The notes under the pieces: generated by a model
The model's database searches: none
Told to the model about the DNA's origin: nothing
What the model saw: the letters and a program-made list of their open reading frames with translations, nothing else
Shown: positions 14,101 through 45,212 of the stretch, one piece after another
Layout of the letters: each line of letters opens with the position of its first letter
How positions within the stretch are numbered: the stretch's first letter is position 1
Source of the DNA: Euprymna scolopes
Lineage: Eukaryota
Strand: one strand, 5' to 3'
NCBI GenBank assembly: GCA_053919585.1
Contig: CM132807.1
DNA: 64,000 nucleotides
Program-made: the position numbers and the translations under genes

Positions 14101-17100
14101 TAAAATGTTGTTTCTAAGTAAAGATGATCAACCAACTAAAATTCTATTTCGAAGTAAACATTGATTGAAGAAATAAAATGTTGTTTCTAAGTAAAGATGA
14201 TCAACCAACTAAAATTCTATTTCGAAGTAAACATTGATTGAAGAACTAAAATGTTGTTTCTAAGTAAAGATGATCAAACAACTAAAACTCTATTTCGAAG
14301 TAAACATTGATTGATAAACTAAAATGTTGTTTCTAAGTAAAGATAATCGACGAACTAAAATTCTATTTCGAAGTAAATATTGATTGACCAACTAAAATGT
14401 TGTTTCTAAGTAAAGATGATCAACCAACTAAAATTCTATTTCGACATAAACATTGATTGAAGAACTAAAATGTTGTTTCTAAGTAAAGATGATCAAACAA
14501 CTAAAATTCTATTTCGACATAAACATTGATTGAAGAACTAAAATGTTGTTTCTAAGTAAAGATAATCGACGAACTAAAATTCTATTTCGAAGTAAACATT
14601 GATTGACCAACAAAAATGTTGTTTCTAAGTAAAGAATATCGACGAACTAAAATTCTATTTCGAAGTAAACATTGATTGAAGAACTAAAATGTTGTTTCTA
14701 AGTAAAGATGATCAACCAACTAAAATTCTATTTAGAAGTAAACATTGATTGACCAACTAAAATGTTGTTTCTAAGTAAAGATGATCGACGAACTAAAATT
14801 CTATTTCGAAGTAAACATTGATTGAAGAACTAAAATGTTGTTTCTAAGTAAAGATGATCAAACAACTAAAATTCTATTTCGAAGTAAACATTTATTGACC
14901 AACTAAAATGTTGTTTCTAAGTAAAGATGATCAAACAACTAAAATTCTATTTCGAAGTAAACATTGATTGAATAACTAAAATGTTGTTTCTAAGTAAAGA
15001 TGATCGACGAACTAAAATTCTATTTTGAAGTAAACATTGATTGAAGAACTAAAATGTTGTTTCTAAGTAAAGATGATCAAACAACTAAAATTCTATTTCG
15101 AAGTAAACATTTATAGACCAACTAAAATGTTGTTTCTAAGTAAAGATGATCAACCAACTAAAATTCTATTTCGAAGTAAACATTGATTGATAAACTAAAA
15201 TGTTGTTTCTAAGTAAAGATAATCGACGAACTTAAATTCTATTTCGAAGTAAACATTGATTGAAGAACTAAAATGTTGTTTCTAAGTAAAGATGATCAAA
15301 CAACTAAAATTCTATTTCGAAGTAAACATTGATTGATAAACTAAAATGTTGTTTCTAAGTAAAGATGATCGACAGACTAAAATTCTATTTCGAAGTAAAC
15401 ATTGATTGAAGAACTAAAATGTTGTTTCTAAGTAAAGATGATCAAACAACTAAAATTCTATTTCGAAGTAAACATTGATTGAAGAACTAAAATGTTGTTT
15501 CTAAGTAAAGATGATCAAACAACTAAAATTCTATTTCGAAGTAAACATTGATTGAAGAACTAAAATGTTGTTTCTAAGTAAAGATGATCAAACAACTAAA
15601 ATTCTATTTCGAAGTAAACATTGATTGATAAACTAAAATGTTGTTTCTAAGTAAAGATAATCGACGAACTAAAATTCTATTTCGAAGTAAATATTGATTG
15701 ACCAACTAAAATGTTGTTTCTAAGTAAAGATGATCAACCAACTAAAATTCTATTTCGACATAAACATTGATTGAAGAACTAAAATGTTGTTTCTAAGTAA
15801 AGATGATCAACCAACTAAAATTCTATTTCGAAGTAAACATTTATTGACCAACTAAAATGTTGTTTCTAAGTAAAGATGATCAACCAACTAAAATTTTATT
15901 TCGAAGTAAACATTTATTGAAGAACTAAAATGTTGTTTGTAAGTAAAGATGATCAACCAACTAAAATTCTATTTCGAAGTAAACATTTATTGAAGAACTA
16001 AAATGTTGTTTGTAAGTAAATATGATCAAACAACTAAAATTCTATTTCGAAGTAAACATTGATTGAAGAACTAAAATGTTGTTTTTAAGTAAAGATGATC
16101 AACCAACTAAAATTCTATTTCGAAGTAAACATTTATTGACCAACTAAAATGTTGTTTCTAAGTAAAGATGATCAAACAACTAAAATTCTATTTCGAAGTA
16201 AACATTTATTGAAGAACTAAAATGTTGTTTCTAAGTAAAGATGATCGACGAACTAAAATTCTATTTCGAAGTAAACATTGATTGACCAACTTAAATGTTG
16301 TTTCTAAGTAAAGATAATCGACGAACTAAAATTCTATTTCGAAGTAAACATTGATTGATAAACTAAAATGTTGTTTCTAAGTAAAGGTGATCGACGAACT
16401 AAAATTCTATTTCGAAGTAAACATTGATTGAAGAACTAAAATGTTGTTTCTAAGTAAAGATGATCAACGAACTAAAATTCTATTTCGACATAAACATTGA
16501 TTGAAGAACTAAAATGTTGTTTCTAAGTAAAGATGATCAAACAACTAAAATTCTATTTCGAAGTAAACATTGATTGAAGAACTAAAATGTTGTTTCTAAG
16601 TAAAGATAATCGACGAACTAAAATTCTATTTCGAAGTAAACATTGATTGACCAACTAAAATGTTGTTTCTAAGTAAAGAATATCGACGAACTAAAATTCT
16701 ATTTCGAAGTAAACATTGATTGAAGAACTAAAATGTTGTTTCTAAGTAAAGATGATCAACCAACTAAAATTCTATTTCGAAGTAAACATTGATTGAAGAA
16801 CTAAAATGTTGTTTCTAAGTAAAGATGATCAACCAACTAAAATTCTATTTCGAAGTAAACATTGATTGAAGAACTAAAATGTTGTTTCTAAGTAAAGAAT
16901 ATCGACGAACTAAAATTCTATTTCGAAGTAAACATTGATTGATAAACTAAAATGTTGTTTCTAAGTAAAGATAATCGACGAACTAAAATTCTATTTCGAA
17001 GTAAACATTGATTGAAGAACTAAAATGTTGTTTCTAAGTAAAGATGATCAAACAACTAAAATTCTATTTCGAAGTAAACATTGATTGATAAACTAAAATG

Positions 17101-20100
17101 TTGTTTCTGAGTAAAGATGATCGACGAACTAAAATTCTATTTCGAAGTAAACATTGATTGAAGAACTAAAATGTTGTTTCTAAGTAAAGATGATCAAACA
17201 ACTAAAATTCTATTTCGAAGTAAACATTGATTGAAGAACTAAAATGTTGTTTCTAAGTAAAGATGATCAAACAACTAAAATTCTATTTCGAAGTAAACAT
17301 TGATTGAAGAACTAAAATGTTGTTTCTAAGTAAAGATGATCAAACAACTAAAATTCTATTTCGAAATAAACATTGATTGATAAACTAAAATGTTGTTTCT
17401 AAGTAAAGATAATCGACGAACTAAAATTCTATTTCGAAGTAAATATTGATTGACCAACTAAAATGTTGTTTCTAAGTAAAGATGATCAACCAACTAAAAT
17501 TCTATTTCGACATAAACATTGATTGAAGAACTAAAATGTTGTTTCTAAGTAAAGATGATCAAACAACTAAAATTCTATTTCGACATAAACATTGATTGAA
17601 GAACTAAAATGTTGTTTCTAAGTAAAGATAATCGACGAACTAAAATTCTATTTCGAAGTAAACATTGATTGACCAACTAAAATGTTGTTTCTAAGTAAAG
17701 AATATCGACGAACAAAAATTCTATTTCGAAGTAAACATTGATTGAAGAACTAAAATGTTGTTTCTAAGTAAAGATGATCAACCAACTAAAATTCTATTTC
17801 GAAGTAAACATTGATTGACCAACTAAAATGTTGTTTCTAAGTAAAGATGATCGACGAACTAAAATTCTATTTCGAAGTAAACATTGATTGAAGAACTAAA
17901 ATGTTGTTTCTAAGTAAAGATGATCAACCAACTAAAATTCTATTTCGAAGTAAACATTTATTGACCAACTAAAATGTTGTTTCTAAGTAAAGATGATCAA
18001 ACAACTAAAATTCTATTTCGAAGTAAACATTGATTGAAGAACTAAAATGTTGTTTCTAAGTAAAGATGATCAAACACCTAAAATTCTATTTCGAAGTAAA
18101 CATTGATTGAAGAACTAAAATGTTGTTTCTAAGTAAAGATGATCAAACAACTAAAATTCTATTTTGAAGTAAACATTGATTGAAACACTAAAATGTTGTT
18201 TCTAAGTAAAGATGATCAAACAACTAAAATTCTATTTCGAAGTAAACATTGATTGAAGAACTAAAATGTTGTTTCTAAGTAAAGATGATCAAACAACTAA
18301 AATTCTATTTCGAAGTAAACATTGATTGAAGAACTAAAATGTTGTTTCTAAGTAAAGATGATCGACGAACTAAAATTCTATTTCGAAGAAAACATTGATT
18401 GACCAACTTAAATGTAGTTTCTAAGTAAAGATAATCGACGAACTAAAATTCTATTTCGAAGTAAACATTGATTGATAAACTAAAATGTTGTTTCTAAGTA
18501 AAGGTGATCGACGAACTAAAATTCTATTTCGAAGTAAACATTGATTGAAGAACTAAAATGTTGTTTCTAAGTAAAGATGATCAACGAACTAAAATTCTAT
18601 TTCGACATAAACATTGATTGAAGAACTAAAATGTTGTTTCTAAGTAAAGATGATCAAACAACTAAAATTCTATTTCGAAGTAAACATTGATTGAAGAACT
18701 AAAATGTTGTTTCTAAGTAAAGATAATCGACGAACTAAAATTCTATTTCGAAGTAAACATTGATTGACCAACTAAAATGTTGTTTCTAAGTAAAGAATAT
18801 CGACGAACTAAAATTCTATTTCGAAGTAAACATTGATTGAAGAACTAAAATGTTGTTTCTAAGTAAAGATGATCAACCAACTAAAATTCTATTTCGAAGT
18901 AAACATTGATTGAAGAACTAAAATGTTGTTTCTAAGTAAAGATGATCAACCAACTAAAATTCTATTTCGAAGTAAACATTGATTGAAGAACTAAAATGTT
19001 GTTTCTAAGTAAAGAATATCGACGAACTAAAATTCTATTTCGAAGTAAACATTGATTGATAAACTAAAATGTTGTTTCTAAGTAAAGATAATCGACGAAC
19101 TAAAATTCTATTTCGAAGTAAACATTGATTGAAGAACTAAAATGTTGTTTCTAAGTAAAGATGATCAAACAACTAAAATTCTATTTCGAAGTAAACATTG
19201 ATTGATAAACTAAAATGTTGTTTCTGAGTAAAGATGATCGACGAACTAAAATTCTATTTCGAAGTAAACATTGATTGAAGAACTAAAATGTTGTTTCTAA
19301 GTAAAGATGATCAAACAACTAAAATTCTATTTCGAAGTAAACATTGATTGAAGAACTAAAATGTTGTTTCTAAGTAAAGATGATCAAACAACTAAAATTC
19401 TATTTCGAAGTAAACATTGATTGAAGAACTAAAATGTTGTTTCTAAGTAAAGATGATCAAACAACTAAAATTCTATTTCGAAGTAAACATTGATTGATAA
19501 ACTAAAATGTTGTTTCTAAGTAAAGATAATCGACGAACTAAAATTCTATTTCGAAGTAAATATTGATTGACCAACTAAAATGTTGTTTCTAAGTAAAGAT
19601 GTTCAACCAACTAAAATTCTATTTCGACATAAACATTGATTGAAGAACTAAAATGTTGTTTCTAAGTAAAGATGATCAAACAACTAAAATTCTATTTCGA
19701 CATAAACATTGATTGAAGAACTAAAATGTTGTTTCTAAGTAAAGATAATCGACGAACTAAAATTCTATTTCGAAGTAAACATTGATTGACCAACTAAAAT
19801 GTTGTTTCTAAGTAAAGAATATCGACGAACAAAAATTCTATTTCGAAGTAAACATTGATTGAAGAACTAAAATGTTGTTTCTAAGTAAAGATGATCAACC
19901 AACTAAAATTCTATTTCGAAGTAAACATTGATTGACCAACTAAAATGTTGTTTCTAAGTAAAGATGATCGACGAACTAAAATTCTATTTCGAAGTAAACA
20001 TTGATTGAAGAACTAAAATGTTGTTTCTAAGTAAAGATGATCAACCAACTAAAATTCTATTTCGAAGTAAACATTTATTGACCAACTAAAATGTTGTTTC

Positions 20101-23100
20101 TAAGTAAAGATGATCAAACAACTAAAATTCTATTTCGAAGTAAACATTGATTGAAGAACTAAAATGTTGTTTCTAAGTAAAGATGATCAAACACCTAAAA
20201 TTCTATTTCGAAGTAAACATTGATTGAAGAACTAAAATGTTGTTTCTAAGTAAAGATGATCAAACAACTAAAATTCTATTTTGAAGTAAACATTGATTGA
20301 AACACTAAAATGTTGTTTCTAAGTAAAGATGATCAAACAACTAAAATTCTATTTCGAAGTAAACATTGATTGAAGAACTAAAATGTTGTTTCGAAGTAAA
20401 GATGATCAAACAACTAAAATTCTATTTCGAAGTAAACATTGATTGAAGAACTAAAATGTTGTTTCTAAGTAAAGATGATCAAACAACTAAAATTCTATTT
20501 CGAAGTAAACATTGATTGAAGAACTAAAATGTTGTTTCTAAGTAAAGATGATCAACGAACTAAAATTCTATTTCGAAGTAAACATTGATTGAAGAACTAA
20601 AATGTTGTTTCTAAGTAAAGATGATCAACCAACTAAAATTCTATTTCGAAGTAAACATTTATTGACCAACTAAAATGTTGTTTCTAAGTAAAGATAATCG
20701 ACGAACTAAAATTCTATTTCGAAGTAAACATTGATTGAAGAACTAAAATGTTGTTTCTAAGTAAAGATGATCAAACAACTAAAATTCTATTTCGAAGTAA
20801 ACATTTATTGACCAACTAAAATGTTGTTTCTAAGTAAAGATGATCAAACAACTAAAATTCTATTTCGAAGTAAACATTGATTGAAGAACTAAAATATTGT
20901 TTCTAGGTAAAGATGATCAACCAACTAAAATTCTATTTCGAAGTAAACATTGATTGAAGAACTAAAATGTTGTTTCTAAGTAAAGATGATCAAACAACTA
21001 AAATTCTATTTCGAAGTAAACATTGATTGAAGAACTAAAATGTTGTTTCTAAGTAAAGATGATCAACCAACTAAAATTCTATTTCGAAGTAAACATTGAT
21101 TGAAGAACTAAAATGTTGTTTCTAAGTAAAGATGATCAACCAACTAAAATTCTATTTCGAAGTAAAGATTGATTGAAGAACTAAAATGTTGTTTCTAAGT
21201 AAAGATGATCAACCAACTAAAATTCTATTTCGAAGTAAATATTGATTGAAGAACTAAAATGTTGTTTCTAAGTAAAGATGATCAAACAACTAAAATTCTA
21301 TTTCGAAGTAAACATTGATTGAAGAACTAAATGTTGTTTCTAAGTAAAGATAATCGACGAACTAAAATTCTATTTCGAAGTAAATATTGATTGAAGAACT
21401 AAAATGTTGTTTCTAAGTAAAGATGATCAAACAACTAAAATTCTATTTCGAAGTAAACATTGATTGACCAACTAAAATGTTGTTTCTAAGTAAAGATGAT
21501 CGACGAACTAAAATTCTATTTCGAAGTAAACATTGATTGAAGAACTAAAATGTTGTTTCTAAGTAAAGATGATCAACCATCTAAAATTCTATTTCGAAGT
21601 AAACATTTATTGACCAACTAAAATGTTGTTTCTAAGTAAAGATGATCAAACAACTAAAATTCTATTTCGAAGTAAACATTTATTGACCAACTAAAATGTT
21701 GTTTCTAAGTAAAGATGATCAAACAACTAAAATTCTATTTCGAAGTAAACATTGATTGATAAACTAAAATGTTGTTTCTAATTAAAGATGATCAACCAAC
21801 TAAAATTCTATTTCGAAGTAAACATTGATTGAAGAACTAAAATGTTGTTTCTAAGTAAAGATGATCAACCAACTAAAATTCTATTTCGAAGTAAACATTG
21901 ATTGAAGAACTAAAATGTTGTTTCTAAGTAAAGATGATCAAACAACTAAAACTCTATTTCGAAGTAAACATTGATTGATAAACTAAAATGTTGTTTCTAA
22001 GTAAAGATAATCGACGAACTAAAATTCTATTTCGAAGTAAATATTGATTGACCAACTAAAATGTTGTTTCTAAGTAAAGATGATCAACCAACTAAAATTC
22101 TATTTCGACATAAACATTGATTGAAGAACTAAAATGTTGTTTCTAAGTAAAGATGATCAAACAACTAAGATTCTATTTCGACATAAACATTGATTGAAGA
22201 ACTAAAATGTTGTTTCTAAGTAAAGATAATCGACGAACTAAAATTCTATTTCGAAGTAAACATTGATTGACCAACTAAAATGTTGTTTCTAAGTAAAGAA
22301 TATCGACGAACTAAAATTCTATTTCGAAGTAAACATTGATTGAAGAACTAAAATGTTGTTTCTAAGTAAAGATGATCAACCAACTAAAATTCTATTTAGA
22401 AGTAAACATTGATTGACCAACTAAAATGTTGTTTCTAAGTAAAGATGATCGACGAACTAAAATTCTATTTTGAAGTAAACATTGATTGAAGAACTAAAAT
22501 GTTGTTTCTAAGTAAAGATGATCAAACAACTAAAATTCTATTTCGAAGTAAACATTTATTGACCAACTAAAATGATGTTTCTAAGTAAAGATGATCAACG
22601 AACTAAAATTCTATTTCGAAGTAAACATTGATTGATAAACTAAAATGTTGTTTCTAAGTAAAGATGATCAAACAACTAAAATTCTATTTCGAAGTAAACA
22701 TTGATTGAAGAACTAAAATGTTGTTTCTAAGTAAAGATGATCAAACAACTAAAATTCTATTTCGAAGTAAGATTGATTGAAGAACTAAAATGTTGTTTCT
22801 AAGTAAAGATGATCAACCAACTAAAATTCTATTTCGAAGTAAATATTGATTGAAGAACTAAAATGTTGTTTCTAAGTAAAGATGATCAAACAACTAAAAT
22901 TCTATTTCGAAGTAAACATTGATTGAAGAACTAAATGTTGTTTCTATGTAAAGATAATCGACGAACTAAAATTCTATTTCGAAGTAAATATTGATTGAAG
23001 AACTAAAATGTTGTTTCTAAGTAAAGATGATCAAACAACTCAAATTCTATTTCGAAGTAAATATTGATTGACCAACTAAAATGTTGTTTCTAAGTAAAGA

Positions 23101-23673
23101 TGATCGACGAACTAAAATTCTATTTCGAAGTAAACATTGATTGAAGAACTAAAATGTTGTTTCTAAGTAAAGATGATCAACCAACTAAAATTCTATTTCG
23201 AAGTAAACATTTATTGACCAACTAAAATGTTGTTTCTAAGTAAAGATGATCAACGAACTAAAATTCTATTTCGAAGTAAACATTTATTGACCAACTAAAA
23301 TGTTGTTTCTAAGTAAAGATGATCAAACAACTAAAATTCTATTTCGAAGTAAACATTGATTGATAAACTAAAATGTTGTTTCTAATTAAAGATGATCAAC
23401 CAACTAAAATTCTATTTCGAAGTAAACATTGATTGAAGAACTAAAATGTTGTTTCTAAGTAAAGATGATCAACCAACTAAAATTCTATTTCGAAGTAAAC
23501 ATTAATTGAGGAACTAAAATGTTGTTTCTAAGTAAAGATGATCAACCAACTAAAATTCTATTTCGAAGTAAACATTGATTGAAGAACTAAAATGTTGTTT
23601 CTAAGTAAAGATGATCAAACAACTAAAATTCTATTTCGAAGTAAACATTGATTGAAGAACTAAAATGTTGTTT
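5195..23673 (+). repeat. 73-bp satellite array, left block (~250 units)
   Basis: Unit AACTAAAATTCTATTTCGAAGTAAACATTGATTGAAG (37) + AACTAAAATGTTGTTTCTAAGTAAAGATGATCAACC (36), highly homogeneous. Confidence 0.99.
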
Positions 23674-26600
23674 TCTAGGTTGGCAGTATTTTTGCGCGAA
23701 CAGTTGGCAGAGTTGGTGGAAATTTTCTGTTTCTATGTCTATCCTTGTAGCCATGTCACTAGTAAGGGTGCTGGAGGTAAACGTTTTGTCTGGGCTGACG
23801 TTATCCGCCTGATAGTCAGGGACCCGAACCTTGGATTAACCACTAAGGAGGCTGTCCTATCAGCAGGTGCAAAGTACTGGGGCTGCTGTATTGCCATCTG
23901 GTGAATGGAATCTGGACCATGCAGTAGCTTCTGGTGGGGCCTCTCGATGCCATACTAGTGGGTAATTGTTACGGCTTTACCTTATCATGTGGTACAAAAA
24001 AAAAAAAAAAAAAAAATTCTTCGTTTCTTTTTCTCTCTTAGTTTCCCCTCTCTGTCCTGCTCTAAGTAAATCTGTCGACCTAGTCCACAAATTCCAAAAT
24101 TTCATCATGACAAGTTTCAAGAAAAAATACACGATTAAACCCGGTTCTCCAACTTCCAACGTAGACCCCTACTACCATGTCTCCTTCTCCAACATCAGGG
24201 GTCTACGTTCTAACCTTCCAGAGGTTGAAACCCAATTACAGGAGACTAAACCAGACCTTTTATTTTTAAGTGAAACTGGCATTGGACAGGCTATTTCCCT
24301 TGATGAGTTTGCAATTACAGGATACTCTAACTTAACTTCTAAATCTGACCCCCAAGATCGCCATGGGCATGGAATATGTGCCTATATTAAAGATAGCTTT
24401 CCATGTGGGAGGGACATCTCCAGGGAAGATCCTAACTTACCCTATATGTGCTTCCGGGTTGCTTTAGCTCACACTACTGCATTTATATTTACTCTCTATC
24501 GCCCCCACAACAGCGGAGTTACTATCTTTCAAAGCATATCTGAGAAAATTGACCAAGTCCTTTCTACTTATCCTTCAGCTAACATTCACGTATGTGGAGA
24601 CTTCAATGTTCACAACGTCGAATGGTTGACCCACTCAAACAAGACCGATGATGAGGGGAGGTTCTGTCATGATTTCTCCATTGCCTATGACCTCACTCAG
24701 ATTGTTCAGGAACCTACCCGTGTGCCCGATAATGACGGCCAGTATGCGAGCCTACTAGACCTTTTTCTCACAACTTGCCCTGAACTATGTTCAGTTTCTG
24801 TTCTGTCGCCTCTTGGATCTTCCGACCACTCTGTTGTATCAATTAAGATAAAAATGAAATGTAATAAGTCCCCAGACGTACCTCTTCATCGTACAGTATA
24901 TCGATACACTAAGGCTGACTGGGATAGCTTCCGTACATTTATATCTGATCTACCTCTGCATTCCATGTTTAAAAAGGATGTGTCCTCTATAGTATTAGAC
25001 CTAACTGAATGGTTAATTGTAGGTATTGACCATTTCATACCCTCTAAAAAGTTTCAGCAAAAACCTAACAGCCAGCCATGGTTCTCTCCAGAATGTGCTG
25101 CTGCCATTGCGCACAGAAATCACTTTTTCCACTGCTTCAAACGTAATAGATGTATGGAAACTAAAGCCGTTTTCAGGACTGCCAGCAACCATTGTAAGAA
25201 AGTAATAAGGAACGCAAGAGAGTTGTATGCTCAATCTGTTAAGTCCAAAGTAGCTGAGCAGCGGCTTGGTTCCCACCAGTTTTGGCAAATAGCAAACAGA
25301 ATCCTGAACAGAAGCGTGTGCTCCATCCCAACTATTATCAATGGATCTGAGGTAATCTCGTCAGCATCAGACAAAGCCAAACTCTTTGTCAAGAACTTTG
25401 CAGCTAATTCTACCCTTTGCGACCAAGACCGCCAACCCCCAATATTTCCTCTTGTATCAGAAAACACGCTATGTGATATACGTATATCTGTACGTGATGT
25501 TGCCAAGCTAATCAAAAACCTTGATTCCAGTAAAGCAACTGGCCCTGATGGTATTCCAATTATAGTACTCAAAAAACTTCAACCTGAACTAGCGCCCATA
25601 CTTACAAAACTGTTTAAACGTTGTCTTAAGGAGAATAGTTTCCCATCTCCCTGGAAAATCTCATCAGTATGCCCTGTATTTAAGAATTCAGGTGATCGCT
25701 CATCCCCCTCTCAGTACAGGCCAATAAGTCTCCTGTGCGTCATGAGTAAGTTGCTAGAATCTGTATTAAATACAGAAGTAATCAAACATCTCAACAAAAA
25801 TAACCTTCTTAGTGACACTCAATATGGTTTCCGTTCTGCTAGATCTACAGCAGATGTCCTTACAGTTATATCGCATAGGATTAGCAAATCTCTCGACGGT
25901 GGCAATCTTTCTAGGGCAATTGCTCTTGACATATCTAAAGCCTTTGATAGGGTATGGCATAAAGGTTTACTTCATAAGACCGCTAGCTATGGTATAGCTG
26001 GAAAAGTCTTCTCAATTATTAAATCATTTCTTTCTGATAGATTCATAAGAGTAGTAGTTGAGGGGCAAAAATCAGAAGCTCACAATATTAATGCCGGTGT
26101 CCCTCAGGGATCCATCCTGGGCCCAACTCTTTTCCTGATCTACATTAATGATCTTCCAAATCATATCCTTACATCATTTGTAGACATTTATGCTGACGAC
26201 ACTACCATTTATGGTACCACATCTAAGACAGTAAACGAGCAAGTTCTCTCCAATTCTCTCTCCTCTGATCTTGAGCACGTAGTACAATGGGGAAAGGAGT
26301 GGCTGGTTACTTTTAATGCATCTAAAACCAAGCTTCTCTCTTTACATCATCAACATTCTAATCCACATTTGTCATCAATTGAAATGAATGGCTCTCGTCT
26401 TCAGGAGGCCTCAAGTTTTGACAAGCTTCTGGGCTTGACCATTACTCCTGATCTTAAATGGAACACGTATATCAAATCTGTTGCCAAGGCCGCTGGAAAA
26501 ATGGTGGGATCTTTCTATCGATCCAGTAGATATCTCACTGCTGATGCTATTCTCTATCTATATAAGAGCCAGGTACGTCCAAGGATGGAATACTGTTGCC

Positions 26601-27165
26601 ACATCTGGGCAGGAGCTGCTAGAAAGAACTTGTCCTGCCTTGATAGAGTTCAAAATAGACTTCGTAGCCTCGTAGGAGATGTCCTTTTCTCCTCCTTGCA
26701 ACCTCTATCTCACAGAAGAGATGTTGCGAGTTTGTCTCTGATGTATCGTTATTTTCATGGAAAGTGTTCAACTGAGCTTCAATCTATGGTCCCCCCTCGC
26801 CAAACTTTCACAAGAAACACTCGTCTAGCTGTAAACACTATCAATAATTTCCCCCACTCTTTATCTGTGCCTAAACCTAAACGTAGATTCCATGAACAAA
26901 GCTTCTTTCTTAGAACTGCACGCCTGTGGAATTGTCTTCCGTTTTCCTGCTTTCCGGCTGACTACAATATGGTTTTGTTCAAGTCTAAAGTAAATAAGTT
27001 CTTGATGAGCCGTTCCATATAAGTTATTAAATTTACCAAATTTTCATTACTAATGATTACTATATTGACCAACTTCTACTGTACACTCTTTAACCCTTAT
27101 CCTTGAGTGGCCTCTGGGCCTTGATAATGTGGTGATGCCTTTGTAAAAAAAAAAAAAAAAAAAAA
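23674..27165 (+). mobile_element. Intact single-ORF non-LTR retrotransposon, CR1-group (Zenon-like, no ORF1)
   Basis: ~430-bp 5' region with an internal A21 (23996-24016), APE+RT ORF, short 3' UTR with ggcc-tctg-ggcc stem-loop, A21 tail (27145-27165); inserted at tttct|aagtaaag of the satellite. Confidence 0.95.
24107..27022 (+). CDS. LINE ORF2-type protein: APE endonuclease + reverse transcriptase (~971 aa from ATG 24107; frame open from 23966)
   Basis: APE motifs SNIRGL, LSET, GDFN, LDLFL, SDH; RT motifs GPDGIP, YRPISLL, QYGFR, LDISKAFDRV, GVPQGSILGP, YADD, LG; CR1-like C-terminus YKSQVRPRMEYCCHIW, LSHRRDVASL. Confidence 0.97.
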   Translation: MTSFKKKYTIKPGSPTSNVDPYYHVSFSNIRGLRSNLPEVETQLQETKPDLLFLSETGIGQAISLDEFAITGYSNLTSKSDPQDRHGHGICAYIKDSFPCGRDISREDPNLPYMCFRVALAHTTAFIFTLYRPHNSGVTIFQSISEKIDQVLSTYPSANIHVCGDFNVHNVEWLTHSNKTDDEGRFCHDFSIAYDLTQIVQEPTRVPDNDGQYASLLDLFLTTCPELCSVSVLSPLGSSDHSVVSIKIKMKCNKSPDVPLHRTVYRYTKADWDSFRTFISDLPLHSMFKKDVSSIVLDLTEWLIVGIDHFIPSKKFQQKPNSQPWFSPECAAAIAHRNHFFHCFKRNRCMETKAVFRTASNHCKKVIRNARELYAQSVKSKVAEQRLGSHQFWQIANRILNRSVCSIPTIINGSEVISSASDKAKLFVKNFAANSTLCDQDRQPPIFPLVSENTLCDIRISVRDVAKLIKNLDSSKATGPDGIPIIVLKKLQPELAPILTKLFKRCLKENSFPSPWKISSVCPVFKNSGDRSSPSQYRPISLLCVMSKLLESVLNTEVIKHLNKNNLLSDTQYGFRSARSTADVLTVISHRISKSLDGGNLSRAIALDISKAFDRVWHKGLLHKTASYGIAGKVFSIIKSFLSDRFIRVVVEGQKSEAHNINAGVPQGSILGPTLFLIYINDLPNHILTSFVDIYADDTTIYGTTSKTVNEQVLSNSLSSDLEHVVQWGKEWLVTFNASKTKLLSLHHQHSNPHLSSIEMNGSRLQEASSFDKLLGLTITPDLKWNTYIKSVAKAAGKMVGSFYRSSRYLTADAILYLYKSQVRPRMEYCCHIWAGAARKNLSCLDRVQNRLRSLVGDVLFSSLQPLSHRRDVASLSLMYRYFHGKCSTELQSMVPPRQTFTRNTRLAVNTINNFPHSLSVPKPKRRFHEQSFFLRTARLWNCLPFSCFPADYNMVLFKSKVNKFLMSRSI

Positions 27166-30100
27166 GTAAAGATGATCAACCAACTAAAATTCTATTTCGA
27201 AGTAAACATTAATTGAGGAACTAAAATGTTGTTTCTAAGTAAAGATGATCAACCAACTAAAATTCTATTTCGAAGTAAACATTGATTGAAGAACTAAAAT
27301 GTTGTTTCTAAGTAAAGATGATCAAACAACTAAAATTCTATTTCGAAGTAAACATTGATTGAAGAACTAAAATGTTGTTTCTAAGTAAAGATGATCAACC
27401 AACTAAAATTCTATTTCGAAGTAAACATTGATTGATAAACTAAAATGTTGTTTGTAAGTAAATATGATCAAACAACTAAAATTCTATTTCGAAGTAAACA
27501 TTGATTGAAGAACTAAAATGTTGTTTTTAAGTAAAGATGATCAAACAACTAAAATTCTATTTCGAAGTAAACATTGATTGAAGAACTAAAATGTTGTTTC
27601 TAAGTAAAGATGATCAAACAACTAAAATTCTATTCCGAAGTAAACATTGATTGATAAACTAAAATGTTGTTTGTAAGTAAATATGATCAAACAACTAAAA
27701 TTCTATTTCGAAGTAAACACTGATTGAAGAACTAAAATGTTGTTTCTAAGTAAAGATGATCAAACAACTAAAATTCTATTTCGAAGTAAACATTGATTGA
27801 TAAACTAAAATGTTGTTTCTAATTAAAGATGATCAACCAACTAAAATTCTATTTCGAAGTAAACATTGATTGAAGAACTAAAATGTTGTTTCTAAGTAAA
27901 GATGATCAAACAACTAACATTCTATTTCGAAGTAAACATTGATTGAAGAACTAAAATGTTGTTTCTAAGTAAAGATGATCAAACAACTAAAATTCTATTT
28001 CGAAGTAAACATTGATTGAAGAACTAAAATGTTGTTTCTAAGTAAAGATGATCAACCAACTAAAATTCTATTTCGAAGTAAACATTGATTGATAAACTAA
28101 AATGTTGTTTCTAATTAAAGATGATCAACCAACTAAAATTCTATTTCGAAGTAAACATTGATTGATAAACTAAAATGTTGTTTCTAATTAAAGATGATCA
28201 ACCAACTAAAATTCTATTTCGAAGTAAACATTGATTGAAGAACGAAAATGTTGTTTCTAAGTAAAGATGATCAAACAACTAAAATTCTATTTCGAAGTAA
28301 ACATTTATTGACCAACTAAAATGTTGTTTCTAAGTAAAGATGATCAAACAACTAAAATTCTATTTCGAAGTAAACATTGATTGAAGAACTAAAATGTTGT
28401 TTCTAAGTAAAGATGATCAACCAACTAAAATTCTATTTCGAAGTAAACATTGATTGAAGAACTAAAATGTTGTTTCTAAGTAAAGATGATCAAACAACTA
28501 AAATTCTATTTCGAAGTAAACATTGATTGAAGAACTAAAATGTTGTTTCTAAGTAAAGATGATCAACCAACTAAAATTCTATTTCGAAGTAAACATTGAT
28601 TGAAGAACTAAAATGTTGTTTCTAAGTAAAGATGATCAACCAACTAAAATTCTATTTCGAAGTAAAGATTGATTGAAGAACTAAAATGTTGTTTCTAAGT
28701 AAAGATAATCGACGAACTAAAATTCTATTTCGAAGTAAATATTGATTGAAGAACTAAAATGTTGTTTCTAAGTAAAGATGATCAAACAACTAAAATTCTA
28801 TTTCGAAGTAAACATTGATTGACCAACTAAAATGTTGTTTCTAAGTAAAGATGATCGACGAACTAAAATTCTATTTCGAAGTAAACATTGATTGAAGAAC
28901 TAAAATGTTGTTTCTAAGTAAAGATGATCAACCAACTAAAATTCTATTTCGAAGTAAACATTTATTGACCAACTAAAATGTTGTTTCTAAGTAAAGATGA
29001 TCAAACAACTAAAATTCTATTTCGAAGTAAACATTTATTGACCAACTAAAATGTTGTTTCTAAGTAAAGATGATCAAACAACTAAAATTCTATTTCGAAG
29101 TAAACATTGATTGATAAACTAAAATGTTGTTTCTAAGTAAAGATGATCAACCAACTAAAATTCTATTTCGAAGTAAACATTGATTGAAGAACTAAAATGT
29201 TGTTTCTAAGTAAAGATGATCAACCAACTAAAATTCTATTTCGAAGTAAACATTGATTGAAGAACTAAAATGTTGTTTCTAAGTAAAGATGATCAAACAA
29301 CTAAAATTCTATTTCGAAGTAAACATTGATTGATAAACTAAAATGTTGTTTCTAAGTAAAGATAATCGACGAACTAAAATTCTTTTTCGAAGTAAATATT
29401 GATTGACCAACTAAAATGTTGTTTCTAAGTAAAGATGATCAACCAACTAAAATTCTATTTCGACATAAACATTGATTGAAGAACTAAAATGTTGTTTCTA
29501 AGTAAAGATGATCAAACAACTAAAATTCTATTTCGACATAAACATTGATTGAAAAACTAAAATGTTGTTTCTAAGTAAAGATAATCGACGAACTAAAATT
29601 CTATTTCGAAGTAAACATTGATTGACCAACTAAAATGTTGTTTTTAAGTAAAGAATATCGACGAACTAAAATTCTATTTCGAAGTAAACATTGATTGAAG
29701 AACTAAAATGTTGTTTCTAAGTAAAGATGATCAACCAACTAAAATTCTATTACGAAGTAAACATTGATTGACCAACTAAAATGGTGTTTCTAAGTAAAGA
29801 TGATCGACGAACTAAAATTCTATTTCGAAGTAAACATTGATTGAAGAACTAAAATGTTGTTTCTAAGTAAAGATGATCAAACAACTAAAATTCTATTTCG
29901 AAGTAAACATTTATTGACCAACTAAAATGTTGTTTCTAAGTAAAGATGATCAAACAACTAAAATTCTATTTCGAAGTAAACATTGATTGAAGAACTAAAA
30001 TGTTGTTTTTAAGTAAAGATGATCAAACAACTAAAATTCTATTTCGAAGTAAACATTGATTGAAGAACTAAAATGTTGTTTCTAAGTAAAGATGATCAAA

Positions 30101-45056: not shown

Positions 45057-45212
45057 NNNNNNNNNNNNNNNNNNNNNNNNNNNNNNNNNNNNNNNNNNNN
45101 NNNNNNNNNNNNNNNNNNNNNNNNNNNNNNNNNNNNNNNNNNNNNNNNNNNNNNNNNNNNNNNNNNNNNNNNNNNNNNNNNNNNNNNNNNNNNNNNNNNN
45201 NNNNNNNNNNNN
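45057..45212. other. Assembly gap
   Basis: N run. Confidence 1.

What the first reader, a model, noticed from the sequence alone, without database searches (positions are those of the whole stretch)
23457..27382. LINE insertion flanked by a 219-bp duplication of exactly three satellite monomers, with an empty paralogous site in the same window
Seen: the three units before the LINE (23457-~23675, with the rare attaattgagg variant at 23501) are repeated right after the poly(A) (27164-27382, variant at 27208). The paralogous block at 31321-31700 has the same outer markers (ctaattaaag upstream, and ttgtaagtaaatatg 246 bp after the variant) but only one copy of the three units. Known: LINE TSDs are usually under ~20 bp and CR1 elements often leave none. 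Inference: both strands were cut or primed at the same tttct|aagt motif but three monomers apart (about one nucleosome plus linker). This would mean motif-directed TPRT that also expands the satellite. Post-insertion unequal exchange is the alternative.
Basis: partly seen in the sequence, partly recalled or inferred. Interest (0 to 1): 0.8.

Follow-up and report, generated by a model that had tools for sequence, protein, structure and literature searches.

The report
LINE insertion with three-monomer flanking duplication
A very young jumping element (LINE) sits in a local 73-base tandem repeat between two identical copies of about three repeat units, and a second copy of the same LINE in a different tandem repeat shows the same pattern, which suggests that insertion itself can add whole repeat units to such arrays.

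Summary
Window 23457-23673 and 27164-27380 are identical at 217 of 217 bases. A related block at 30887-32126 carries the same neighbouring monomers but only one copy of the triplet.

The insert (about 23669-27165) is a short-form copy of a very young poly(A) LINE with an intact 971-aa endonuclease and reverse transcriptase ORF. Read depth implies roughly 5,000-22,000 copies at 98% identity or more. The duplication is 210-217 bp, not exactly 219, because the 5' junction is a 5-bp microhomology (tgttt). The inner A-run at 23996-24017 belongs to the LINE.

The satellite exists only at this locus, so recurrent targeting of its motif cannot be tested. Twenty-two other copies lie in unrelated unique sequence, with flank matches of 0-8 bp.

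One unselected copy (L002) lies in a 58-bp array and is flanked by a 229-230-bp duplication, four units minus 1-2 bp. Perfect multi-unit flanks are rare elsewhere in both arrays.

Best reading (about 0.6): a long target-site duplication made during integration, in register with the repeat. Rivals are a pre-existing duplication and a later unequal exchange.

Reads were too sparse to show an empty allele. A third array copy (L049) could not be resolved. This is a new variant of known long TSDs, resting on two cases.

The parts
5089..23456 (+). Left part of the 73-bp tandem array, up to the duplicated block. The unit is itself a dimer of 36-37-bp subrepeats.
   Evidence: TRF reports period 73, 254.7 copies and 93% matches. 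The array is a single locus: an exact 39-mer occurs 134 times, and every place listed (100 of the 134) lies at C25:38.57-38.60 Mb.
23457..23673 (+). Upstream copy of the duplicated block (monomers L-B-A). Its last 5 bases, 23669-23673, are the tgttt microhomology shared with the LINE 5' end.
   Evidence: It is identical at 217 of 217 bases to 27164-27380. The monomer types are shown.
23669..27144 (+). LINE body, short form. Its first base lies between 23669 and 23674. It includes an internal A-run at 23996-24017 and the 3' UTR.
   Evidence: It is 99.3-100% identical to other genomic copies over 3488 bp. Other copies continue 5' as ...gctgttttc|taggttgg, and the A-run is present in all of them.
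24107..27022 (+). Intact 971-aa ORF with an apurinic-type endonuclease domain followed by a reverse transcriptase domain.
   Evidence: Pfam matches are Exo_endo_phos and Exo_endo_phos_2 at residues 29-244 and RVT_1 at residues 534-749. No stop codons. Nearest relatives are 70% identical. The only functional name a source gives among the listed relatives is 'transposon BS'-like, from Hydra.
27145..27165 (+). Poly(A) tail of 21 A. The last 0-2 A may belong to the target sequence aagtaaag.
   Evidence: Read directly from the sequence. In the 50 other fetched loci the A-run ranges from 6 to about 40 A, mostly 24-40.
27164..27380 (+). Downstream copy of the duplicated block (monomers L-B-A).
27381..33305 (+). 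Right part of the 73-bp array.
   Evidence: TRF reports period 73 and 84.1 copies.
30887..32126 (+). Related block with the same flanking monomers and a single triplet (31397-31615, L-A-A). It serves as a stand-in for the empty site.
   Evidence: Monomer-by-monomer comparison. It differs from the insertion locus by one base in the triplet (C16 of X2), by a few bases in the flanking monomers, and by whole-unit indels.

Best explanation
A young poly(A) LINE integrated by target-primed reverse transcription into a local 73-bp tandem array.

The first-strand nick was at about tct|aag, so the poly(A) abuts aagtaaag. The upstream chromosomal end that was joined to the finished cDNA ended 210-217 bp further downstream. 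That point is the equivalent position three monomers on. The join used a 5-bp microhomology (tgttt) with the LINE's 5' end.

Filling in both single-stranded copies then produced a long target-site duplication of about three monomers, which lengthened the array by three units.

Shown: the anatomy, the junctions, the youth of the element, the rarity of such flanks elsewhere in the arrays, and a second case.

Inferred: that the duplication arose during integration, and that the second break, or the end used for second-strand priming, lay about three units downstream. Why the distance is a near-whole number of units is not resolved. One possibility is that the locally best cleavage or joining site recurs in every unit. 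Another is that ends cut at equivalent sites in misaligned units or sister chromatids were joined. A third is homology-guided synthesis.
For: - The flanks are identical at 217 of 217 bases and abut both LINE ends within the junction ambiguity.
- The related block has one triplet.
- No other perfect 3-unit duplication exists in 24 kb of array, and perfect flanks of two or more units occur at about 1.3% of positions.
- The LINE is very young. It is 99.3-100% identical to other copies, and only two of its bases are near-private in reads. Zero mismatches between the two flank copies fits that age.
- An independent, unselected copy, L002, is a 971-bp 5'-truncated LINE in a 58-bp array. It is flanked by 229-230 bp with 1 mismatch, which is four units (231 bp) minus 1-2 bp. 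None of 1385 other positions in that array has flanks of 170 bp or more with at most 1 mismatch.
- Twenty-two copies in unique DNA show no repeat of the first 14 bp of the 3' flank within up to 1.5 kb upstream, only 0-8 bp junction matches. Two of 2 informative array copies against 0 of 22 gives Fisher p = 0.0036. Without the flagged window case, 1 of 1 against 0 of 22 gives p = 0.043.
- Long TSDs are a known minority outcome of LINE integration. ZfL2-2 gave one of 1228 bp among 25 insertions (PMC2666801).
Against: - There are only two cases, and the window case was flagged because it looked odd.
- No true empty allele was seen. Reads were sampled at about 0.33x and gave no junction-spanning or LINE-skipping reads.
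- Whole-unit indels between the related blocks are frequent, so a pre-existing local duplication is not far-fetched.
- A classical distant second-strand cut does not by itself explain why the length is a near-whole number of units in both cases, or why unique-sequence copies never show long TSDs.
- A third array copy (L049, 55-bp array) cannot have a duplication of about 205 bp or more, and whether it has a shorter one is unresolved.
- L002's two flank copies differ at one base.
Confidence: 0.6

Rival explanations
1. Pre-existing duplication. The array already carried a recent L-B-A L-B-A tandem duplication from unequal exchange or slippage. The LINE then inserted in the ordinary way, near-blunt with a 2-9 bp target loss, and happened to land at its centre.
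For: - This automatically explains why the array phase is continuous across the LINE.
- It matches the family's usual 0-8 bp junctions.
- Whole-unit indels are common between related blocks of this array.
- Perfect 2- and 4-unit duplications do exist elsewhere in the array.
Against: - The LINE would have to land in a stretch of about 100 bp within a 28-kb array, a chance of about 0.4%. Counting any perfect duplication of two or more units, the chance is about 1.3%.
- The same coincidence would be needed again at L002, where 0 of 1385 other positions qualify.
- The related block has a single triplet.
Confidence: 0.13
2. Post-insertion unequal exchange. The LINE first inserted with no long TSD. 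Later an out-of-register exchange, or a double-strand-break repair using an empty homologue, took place right next to the LINE and added three units on one side.
For: - It gives a whole-unit, in-phase duplication.
- An exchange within the first 46 bases of monomer j, aligned with X1, would reproduce the observed sequence exactly (monomer maps).
- The single mismatch between L002's two flank copies would fit copies that came from two alleles.
Against: - It needs a second rare event exactly abutting the LINE in both of two very young insertions. L002's LINE is 100% identical to the window copy over 971 bp.
- Exchange between sister chromatids that both carry the LINE would duplicate or delete the LINE instead.
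- Exchanges elsewhere in the array would not place the duplication boundaries at the LINE ends.
Confidence: 0.14
3. Sequence-specific, motif-directed LINE. The endonuclease recognises tttct|aagt and cuts both strands at that motif in different monomers, a nucleosome apart.
For: - Both target ends lie at the same monomer phase.
- In L002 both ends also lie at one phase, cat|aca.
- The two duplications are of similar physical length, about 215 and 230 bp.
Against: - Twenty-two other copies lie in unrelated sequences with no shared motif.
- Twelve A followed by GTAAAGATGATCAA occurs only once in the genome.
- L002's target motif is different.
- In unique DNA the second cut lies 0-8 bp away, not a nucleosome away.
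- L049 excludes a duplication of about 205 bp or more.
Confidence: 0.05
4. Assembly artefact. The duplicated flanks were created by misassembly around a heterozygous insertion in a tandem repeat.
For: - Tandem repeats are error-prone in assemblies.
Against: - The structure is only 3.9 kb, well within one long read.
- Both flank copies carry the same rare variant and join cleanly to different outer monomers.
- The same architecture appears at a second locus on another chromosome-sized contig, L002 on C4.
Confidence: 0.03

Closest known systems
Long target-site duplications (over 20 bp) seen as a minority outcome of LINE integration. Examples are zebrafish ZfL2-2 in DT40 cells (one of 1228 bp among 25 insertions; PMC2666801) and human L1 in cultured cells (Gilbert et al. 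2002 and 2005, as cited there).
   Same: A direct repeat of hundreds of bp lies immediately flanking a poly(A) LINE. The 5' junction is a microhomology. It is explained by a second-strand break far downstream of the first nick.
   Different: Here the length is a near-whole number of tandem-repeat units in both cases (3 x 73 minus 2-9 bp, and 4 x 58 minus 1-2 bp). It was seen only in tandem-array targets (2 of 2 informative) and never in 22 unique-sequence copies. The result is growth of the array.
R9 elements of bdelloid rotifers, rDNA-specific LINEs that regularly make an exceptionally long TSD (Gladyshev and Arkhipova 2009, cited in PMC2861651). The 126-bp length is from my own knowledge of that paper.
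   Same: A LINE whose insertion is flanked by a TSD of over 100 bp in a tandemly repeated target.
   Different: R9 is site-specific, with a fixed TSD at one rDNA site. This LINE inserts all over the genome and usually leaves 0-8 bp.
Repeat-specific LINEs of the R1 and Tx1 groups, which target microsatellites, telomeric repeats or snRNA genes (from my own knowledge of Kojima and Fujiwara's surveys).
   Same: A LINE found inside a tandem repeat, with both junctions at the same repeat phase.
   Different: Target specificity was tested here and not met. Copies are dispersed in unrelated sequences, and the 73-bp array holds a single insertion.
Expansion and contraction of tandem repeats during double-strand-break repair (Paques, Leung and Haber 1998 in yeast; from my own knowledge).
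   Same: Whole-unit changes in register arise at a break inside a tandem array.
   Different: Here the added units flank a retrotransposon on both sides, so the break would be the one made for integration. No such link has been shown experimentally.

Membership tests
Non-LTR retrotransposon (LINE) with an APE-type endonuclease | One protein with an N-terminal apurinic-type endonuclease and a reverse transcriptase | tested here: met
   Pfam Exo_endo_phos and Exo_endo_phos_2 at residues 29-244 and RVT_1 at residues 534-749 of the 971-aa ORF.
Non-LTR retrotransposon (LINE) with an APE-type endonuclease | Many dispersed copies with a common 3' end, a poly(A) tail and variable 5' truncation | tested here: met
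   At least 142 places encode 100% identical protein. 5' ends are spread along the element, and every fetched locus except L016 (which breaks off into an older LINE copy after a few A) ends in poly(A). Read depth rises toward the 3' end.
   Apart from L016, all 50 loci end in gcctttgt followed by an A-run of about 17 to 40 A (mostly 24-40); L016 breaks off into an older LINE copy after 6 A.
   No reference set of LINE clades was available. The only functional name a source gives among the listed relatives is an automatic 'transposon BS'-like name, which points to the Jockey/CR1 group but does not assign a clade.
Site-specific or motif-directed LINE | Independent copies at the same target sequence | tested here: not met
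   Flanks of 22 copies share no motif. The poly(A)-satellite junction word is unique in the genome. The satellite is a single locus.
Long target-site duplication made at integration | An identical direct repeat abutting both ends of the insert | tested here: met
   217 of 217 bases in the window, and 228 of 229 in L002.
Long target-site duplication made at integration | An empty site that carries one copy of the repeat | tested here: inconclusive
   Only a related block in the same array could be examined, and it has one copy. Reads were too sparse to show an empty allele.

The most novel reading that the evidence does not exclude
When this LINE integrates into a tandem array, resolution of the second strand regularly takes place at the equivalent site several units downstream, about 160-230 bp away. 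Each insertion would then add whole units in register. That would make retrotransposition a direct cause of satellite growth. It would also show that the choice of second-strand site depends on local sequence or homology rather than only on distance from the first nick.
Probability: 0.3. Interest if true: 0.75.

Novelty: new variant of a known kind. Interest (0 to 1): 0.55.

Why it matters
How the second half of LINE integration works is still poorly understood. That covers second-strand cleavage, 5' joining and the choice of TSD length. Tandem arrays act as a natural ruler here, because equivalent sites recur at a fixed spacing.

If insertions into arrays systematically give in-register duplications of several units, while the same family gives 0-8 bp in unique DNA, that limits which models of second-strand site choice can be right. 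It would also add a direct route from retrotransposition to satellite expansion.

This genome suits a census. It is 5.9 Gb, from a mollusc, and holds thousands of near-identical young copies of the family.

If the two cases turn out to be coincidence, this is an ordinary young LINE insertion in a local array.

Tried and rejected
- DNA search of the genome with the LINE 3' end found nothing, not even the window itself, because common words are skipped. The full-length protein search failed once.
The sample of array insertions therefore could not be enlarged.
- Reads: two raw Illumina runs sampled at about 0.33x, plus two sets of contigs. Satellite flanks had depth below 1, and no read spanned a junction or skipped the LINE. 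This is no evidence either way on the empty allele or on the assembly.
- L022 lies in an AT-rich repeat of about 16 bp with only 217 bp of 5' flank, so it is uninformative.
- L049 lies in a 55-bp array and its 5' flank lies outside the fetched locus. A BLAST-type search did not even return the query's own place. Exact-word tests exclude an upstream duplicate that reaches the fourth unit, but they leave a duplication of three units or fewer undecided.
- The first 342 bases plus the A-run are not a separate SINE or a chimeric retrocopy. They are part of the LINE in every long copy. Rfam found nothing there.
- The 73-bp unit is not derived from this LINE.
- A global higher-order period in the array was not detected by lag analysis. 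Block relatedness is visible only at the level of monomer types.
- Literature searches found long TSDs but no report of TSDs in register with a repeat unit. The library is limited, so this does not show that none exists.
- Earlier notes of this scan held nothing on this feature.
Full report
**What is in the sequence**

The window holds a 73-bp tandem array at 5089-33305 (TRF). It is interrupted once, at about 23669-27165.

The block before the interruption (23457-23673) and the block after it (27164-27380) are identical at 217 of 217 bases.

I split the array into monomers and gave each distinct monomer a letter.
- The insertion locus reads ...S s . D E t C M L B A, then the insert, then L B A u W A . 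v C M...
- A related block 4.2 kb downstream (once the insert and one triplet are discounted) reads S s F t C M L A A u. A. v C M.

The same outer monomers therefore enclose two L-B-A triplets plus the insert at one place, and a single triplet at the other. The rare L monomer (attaattgagg) occurs only 7 times in the window.

**What the insert is**

The insert carries one intact 971-aa ORF (24107-27022) with an apurinic-type endonuclease domain and a reverse transcriptase domain. It ends in 21 A.

The genome is 5.9 Gb, and run labels and earlier notes describe it as a mollusc. At least 142 other places in it encode a 100% identical C-terminal 271 aa. Fetched copies are 99.3-100% identical in DNA.

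Raw reads sampled at about 0.33x pile up to about 1,800 at the 5' part and about 7,300 near the 3' end at 98% identity or more. That implies roughly 5,400 to 22,000 copies. Only two bases of the window copy, 23898 and 25980, differ from nearly all reads. The copy is therefore very young.

The nearest database relatives are 70% identical. The only functional name a source gives among the listed relatives is an automatic 'transposon BS'-like name. That points to the Jockey/CR1 group. I did not place the element in a clade, and its poly(A) tail is not typical of CR1.

**Corrections to the anatomy**

Longer copies continue upstream of the window copy's first base as ...aaagctgttttc|taggttggcag. 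They extend at least 1.5 kb further through tandem monomers of about 460 bp.

Comparing three sequences fixes the 5' junction:
- the satellite, ...aaaatgttgtttct|aagt
- the LINE, ...gctgttttctagg
- the window, ...aaaatgttgttttctagg

The tct before agg is LINE sequence, and tgttt (23669-23673) is shared by both. The 5' junction is therefore a 5-bp microhomology.

With up to 2 ambiguous A at the poly(A) side, the duplicated target is 210-217 bp. That is three monomers minus 2-9 bp, not exactly three.

The A-run at 23996-24017 is part of the LINE in all copies. The insert is one element.

Five of 25 copies have their 5' end within 40 bp of this point: the window, L035, L039, L050 and L031. That looks like a discrete RNA start rather than random truncation.

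**Is the LINE motif-directed?**

No evidence supports this.

Twenty-four other copies had both ends in hand. Twenty-two of them lie in unique sequence. None repeats the first 14 bases of its 3' flank within up to 1.5 kb upstream, and a BLAST of 600-bp flanks against each other found only low-complexity matches. Junction matches are 0-8 bp, and the flanks share no motif.

The word made of 12 A followed by GTAAAGATGATCAA occurs once in the genome, at the window itself.

The satellite is a single locus. An exact 39-mer of the unit occurs 134 times, and all 100 listed places lie at C25:38.57-38.60 Mb.

**Is the flanking duplication a coincidence?**

In the remaining 24 kb of array, no position is flanked by a perfect 3-unit duplication. 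Perfect flanks of two or more units occur at about 1.3% of positions.

Without the insert, about 100 positions around the insertion point would score as 'flanked by the perfect triplet'. That is about 0.4% of the array.

Against this, whole-unit indels between related blocks are common. A pre-existing duplication cannot be dismissed on the window alone, especially as this window was flagged because it looked unusual.

**A second, unselected case**

Among the 24 other copies, one sits inside a clean tandem repeat of period 58 bp. This is L002 (G000:C4:157818935-157822747), a 971-bp 5'-truncated copy.

Its upstream 229 bp equals its downstream 229 bp with one mismatch. That rises to 230 bp if one A of the tail is counted as target.

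The duplicated block is the second half of a rare 57-bp unit, then three units, then 25 bp. Four units sum to 231 bp, so the block is four units minus 1-2 bp.

None of 1385 other positions in that array has flanks of 170 bp or more with at most 1 mismatch.

Both informative array insertions thus show an in-register duplication of several units, of similar physical length (about 215 and 230 bp). None of the 22 unique-sequence copies does. The Fisher test gives p = 0.0036, or p = 0.043 if the flagged window case is left out.

In both cases the two target ends lie at the same phase of the unit, with a deficit of 1-9 bp. In 'phase space' this looks like the family's usual near-blunt junction.

**A third array copy, unresolved**

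Exact-word searches gave the following.
- The distinctive fourth unit after the poly(A) exists only there and 2750 bp further downstream. An upstream duplicate of about 205 bp or more is therefore excluded.
- The third-unit variant has its last upstream occurrence at C7:15128437, and the array runs on for at least 3 more bases after that unit.

A duplication of three units or fewer, or none at all, remains open. A fixed length of about 220 bp is therefore not established.

**Mechanism**

The simplest account is the classical one for long TSDs (PMC2666801). The first-strand nick falls at about tct|aag. Reverse transcription is primed from that end. The upstream top-strand end that finally primes on the cDNA lies about three units downstream. 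Both copies are then filled in.

The 5-bp microhomology fits the known microhomology-assisted 5' joining.

Two things are not explained by that model alone. One is why the distance is a near-whole number of units in both cases. The other is why long TSDs appear in arrays but not in unique DNA. I considered three possibilities, none of them tested:
- the locally best cleavage or joining site recurs in every unit, so that the second break can fall at an equivalent site in another unit;
- ends cut at equivalent sites in misaligned units or sister chromatids are joined to each other;
- homology-guided synthesis from the sister or homologue occurs before the end is captured by the cDNA.

**Rivals**

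- A pre-existing duplication needs two independent low-probability coincidences.
- A later unequal exchange needs a second event that exactly abuts the LINE in two very young insertions. It would, however, explain the single mismatch in L002.
- An assembly artefact is unlikely for a 3.9-kb structure that recurs on another contig.

**Comparison with what is known**

Long TSDs are a known minority outcome for L1 and ZfL2-2. They are a regular feature of the site-specific rotifer R9 element.

I found no description of TSDs that are whole multiples of a tandem-repeat unit and tied to array targets. The searchable library is limited.

I rate this a new variant of a known kind, resting on two cases. 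The decisive data are a genome-wide census and empty alleles.

Noticed in passing
L033:1-1262 (also L038, L049, L034 and others): Long copies of this LINE carry at least 2.7 tandem monomers of about 460 bp, with T-runs, upstream of the ORF. No ORF1 is visible in the 1.5 kb examined. This layout resembles the monomeric promoters of mouse L1.
   Followed up: partly
window 23669-23674; L035, L039, L050, L031 5' ends: Five of 25 copies start within 40 bp of the same point, just after the monomer region. This suggests a discrete internal transcription start that gives a 3.5-kb short form with the complete ORF.
   Followed up: partly
window 23676-27163 against runs X24 and X23: Read depth implies about 5,400 copies at the 5' part and about 22,000 at the 3' end, at 98% identity or more. 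This is an extremely young and prolific family. Several sites split reads about 60:40 or 80:20, which points to subfamilies.
   Followed up: partly
G000:C2:172454449, 172461098, 172468209: Three identical truncated copies, each with an open frame of 340 aa, lie 6.6 and 7.1 kb apart. The LINE copy has probably been carried along inside a larger tandem duplication.
   Followed up: no
window 5089-33305: The 73-bp unit is a dimer of 36-37-bp subrepeats. The array is built of related blocks of monomer types with frequent whole-unit indels but no single global higher-order period. A more diverged array of the same period lies at 3520-4243.
   Followed up: partly
run X1 (organism A) against window 23300-23580 and 27250-27500: Contigs from a run labelled as a different organism hold words of the 73-bp satellite at depth about 240-720, while the contigs of organism B show almost none. 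The satellite may be more abundant in a relative.
   Followed up: no
L043:1932 and L026: One young copy is inserted into an older copy of a related LINE (77-81% identical), with a 5-8 bp TSD. Several loci show nested older LINE fragments.
   Followed up: no
G000:C7:15095561-15168571: A 55-bp tandem array spans about 70 kb and has a 2750-bp (50-unit) higher-order spacing of marker units. It holds the long LINE copy L049.
   Followed up: partly
window 529-669, 842-1014, 45057-45212, 63595-63755: Four runs of N, 631 bases in total. They were left as they are.
   Followed up: no
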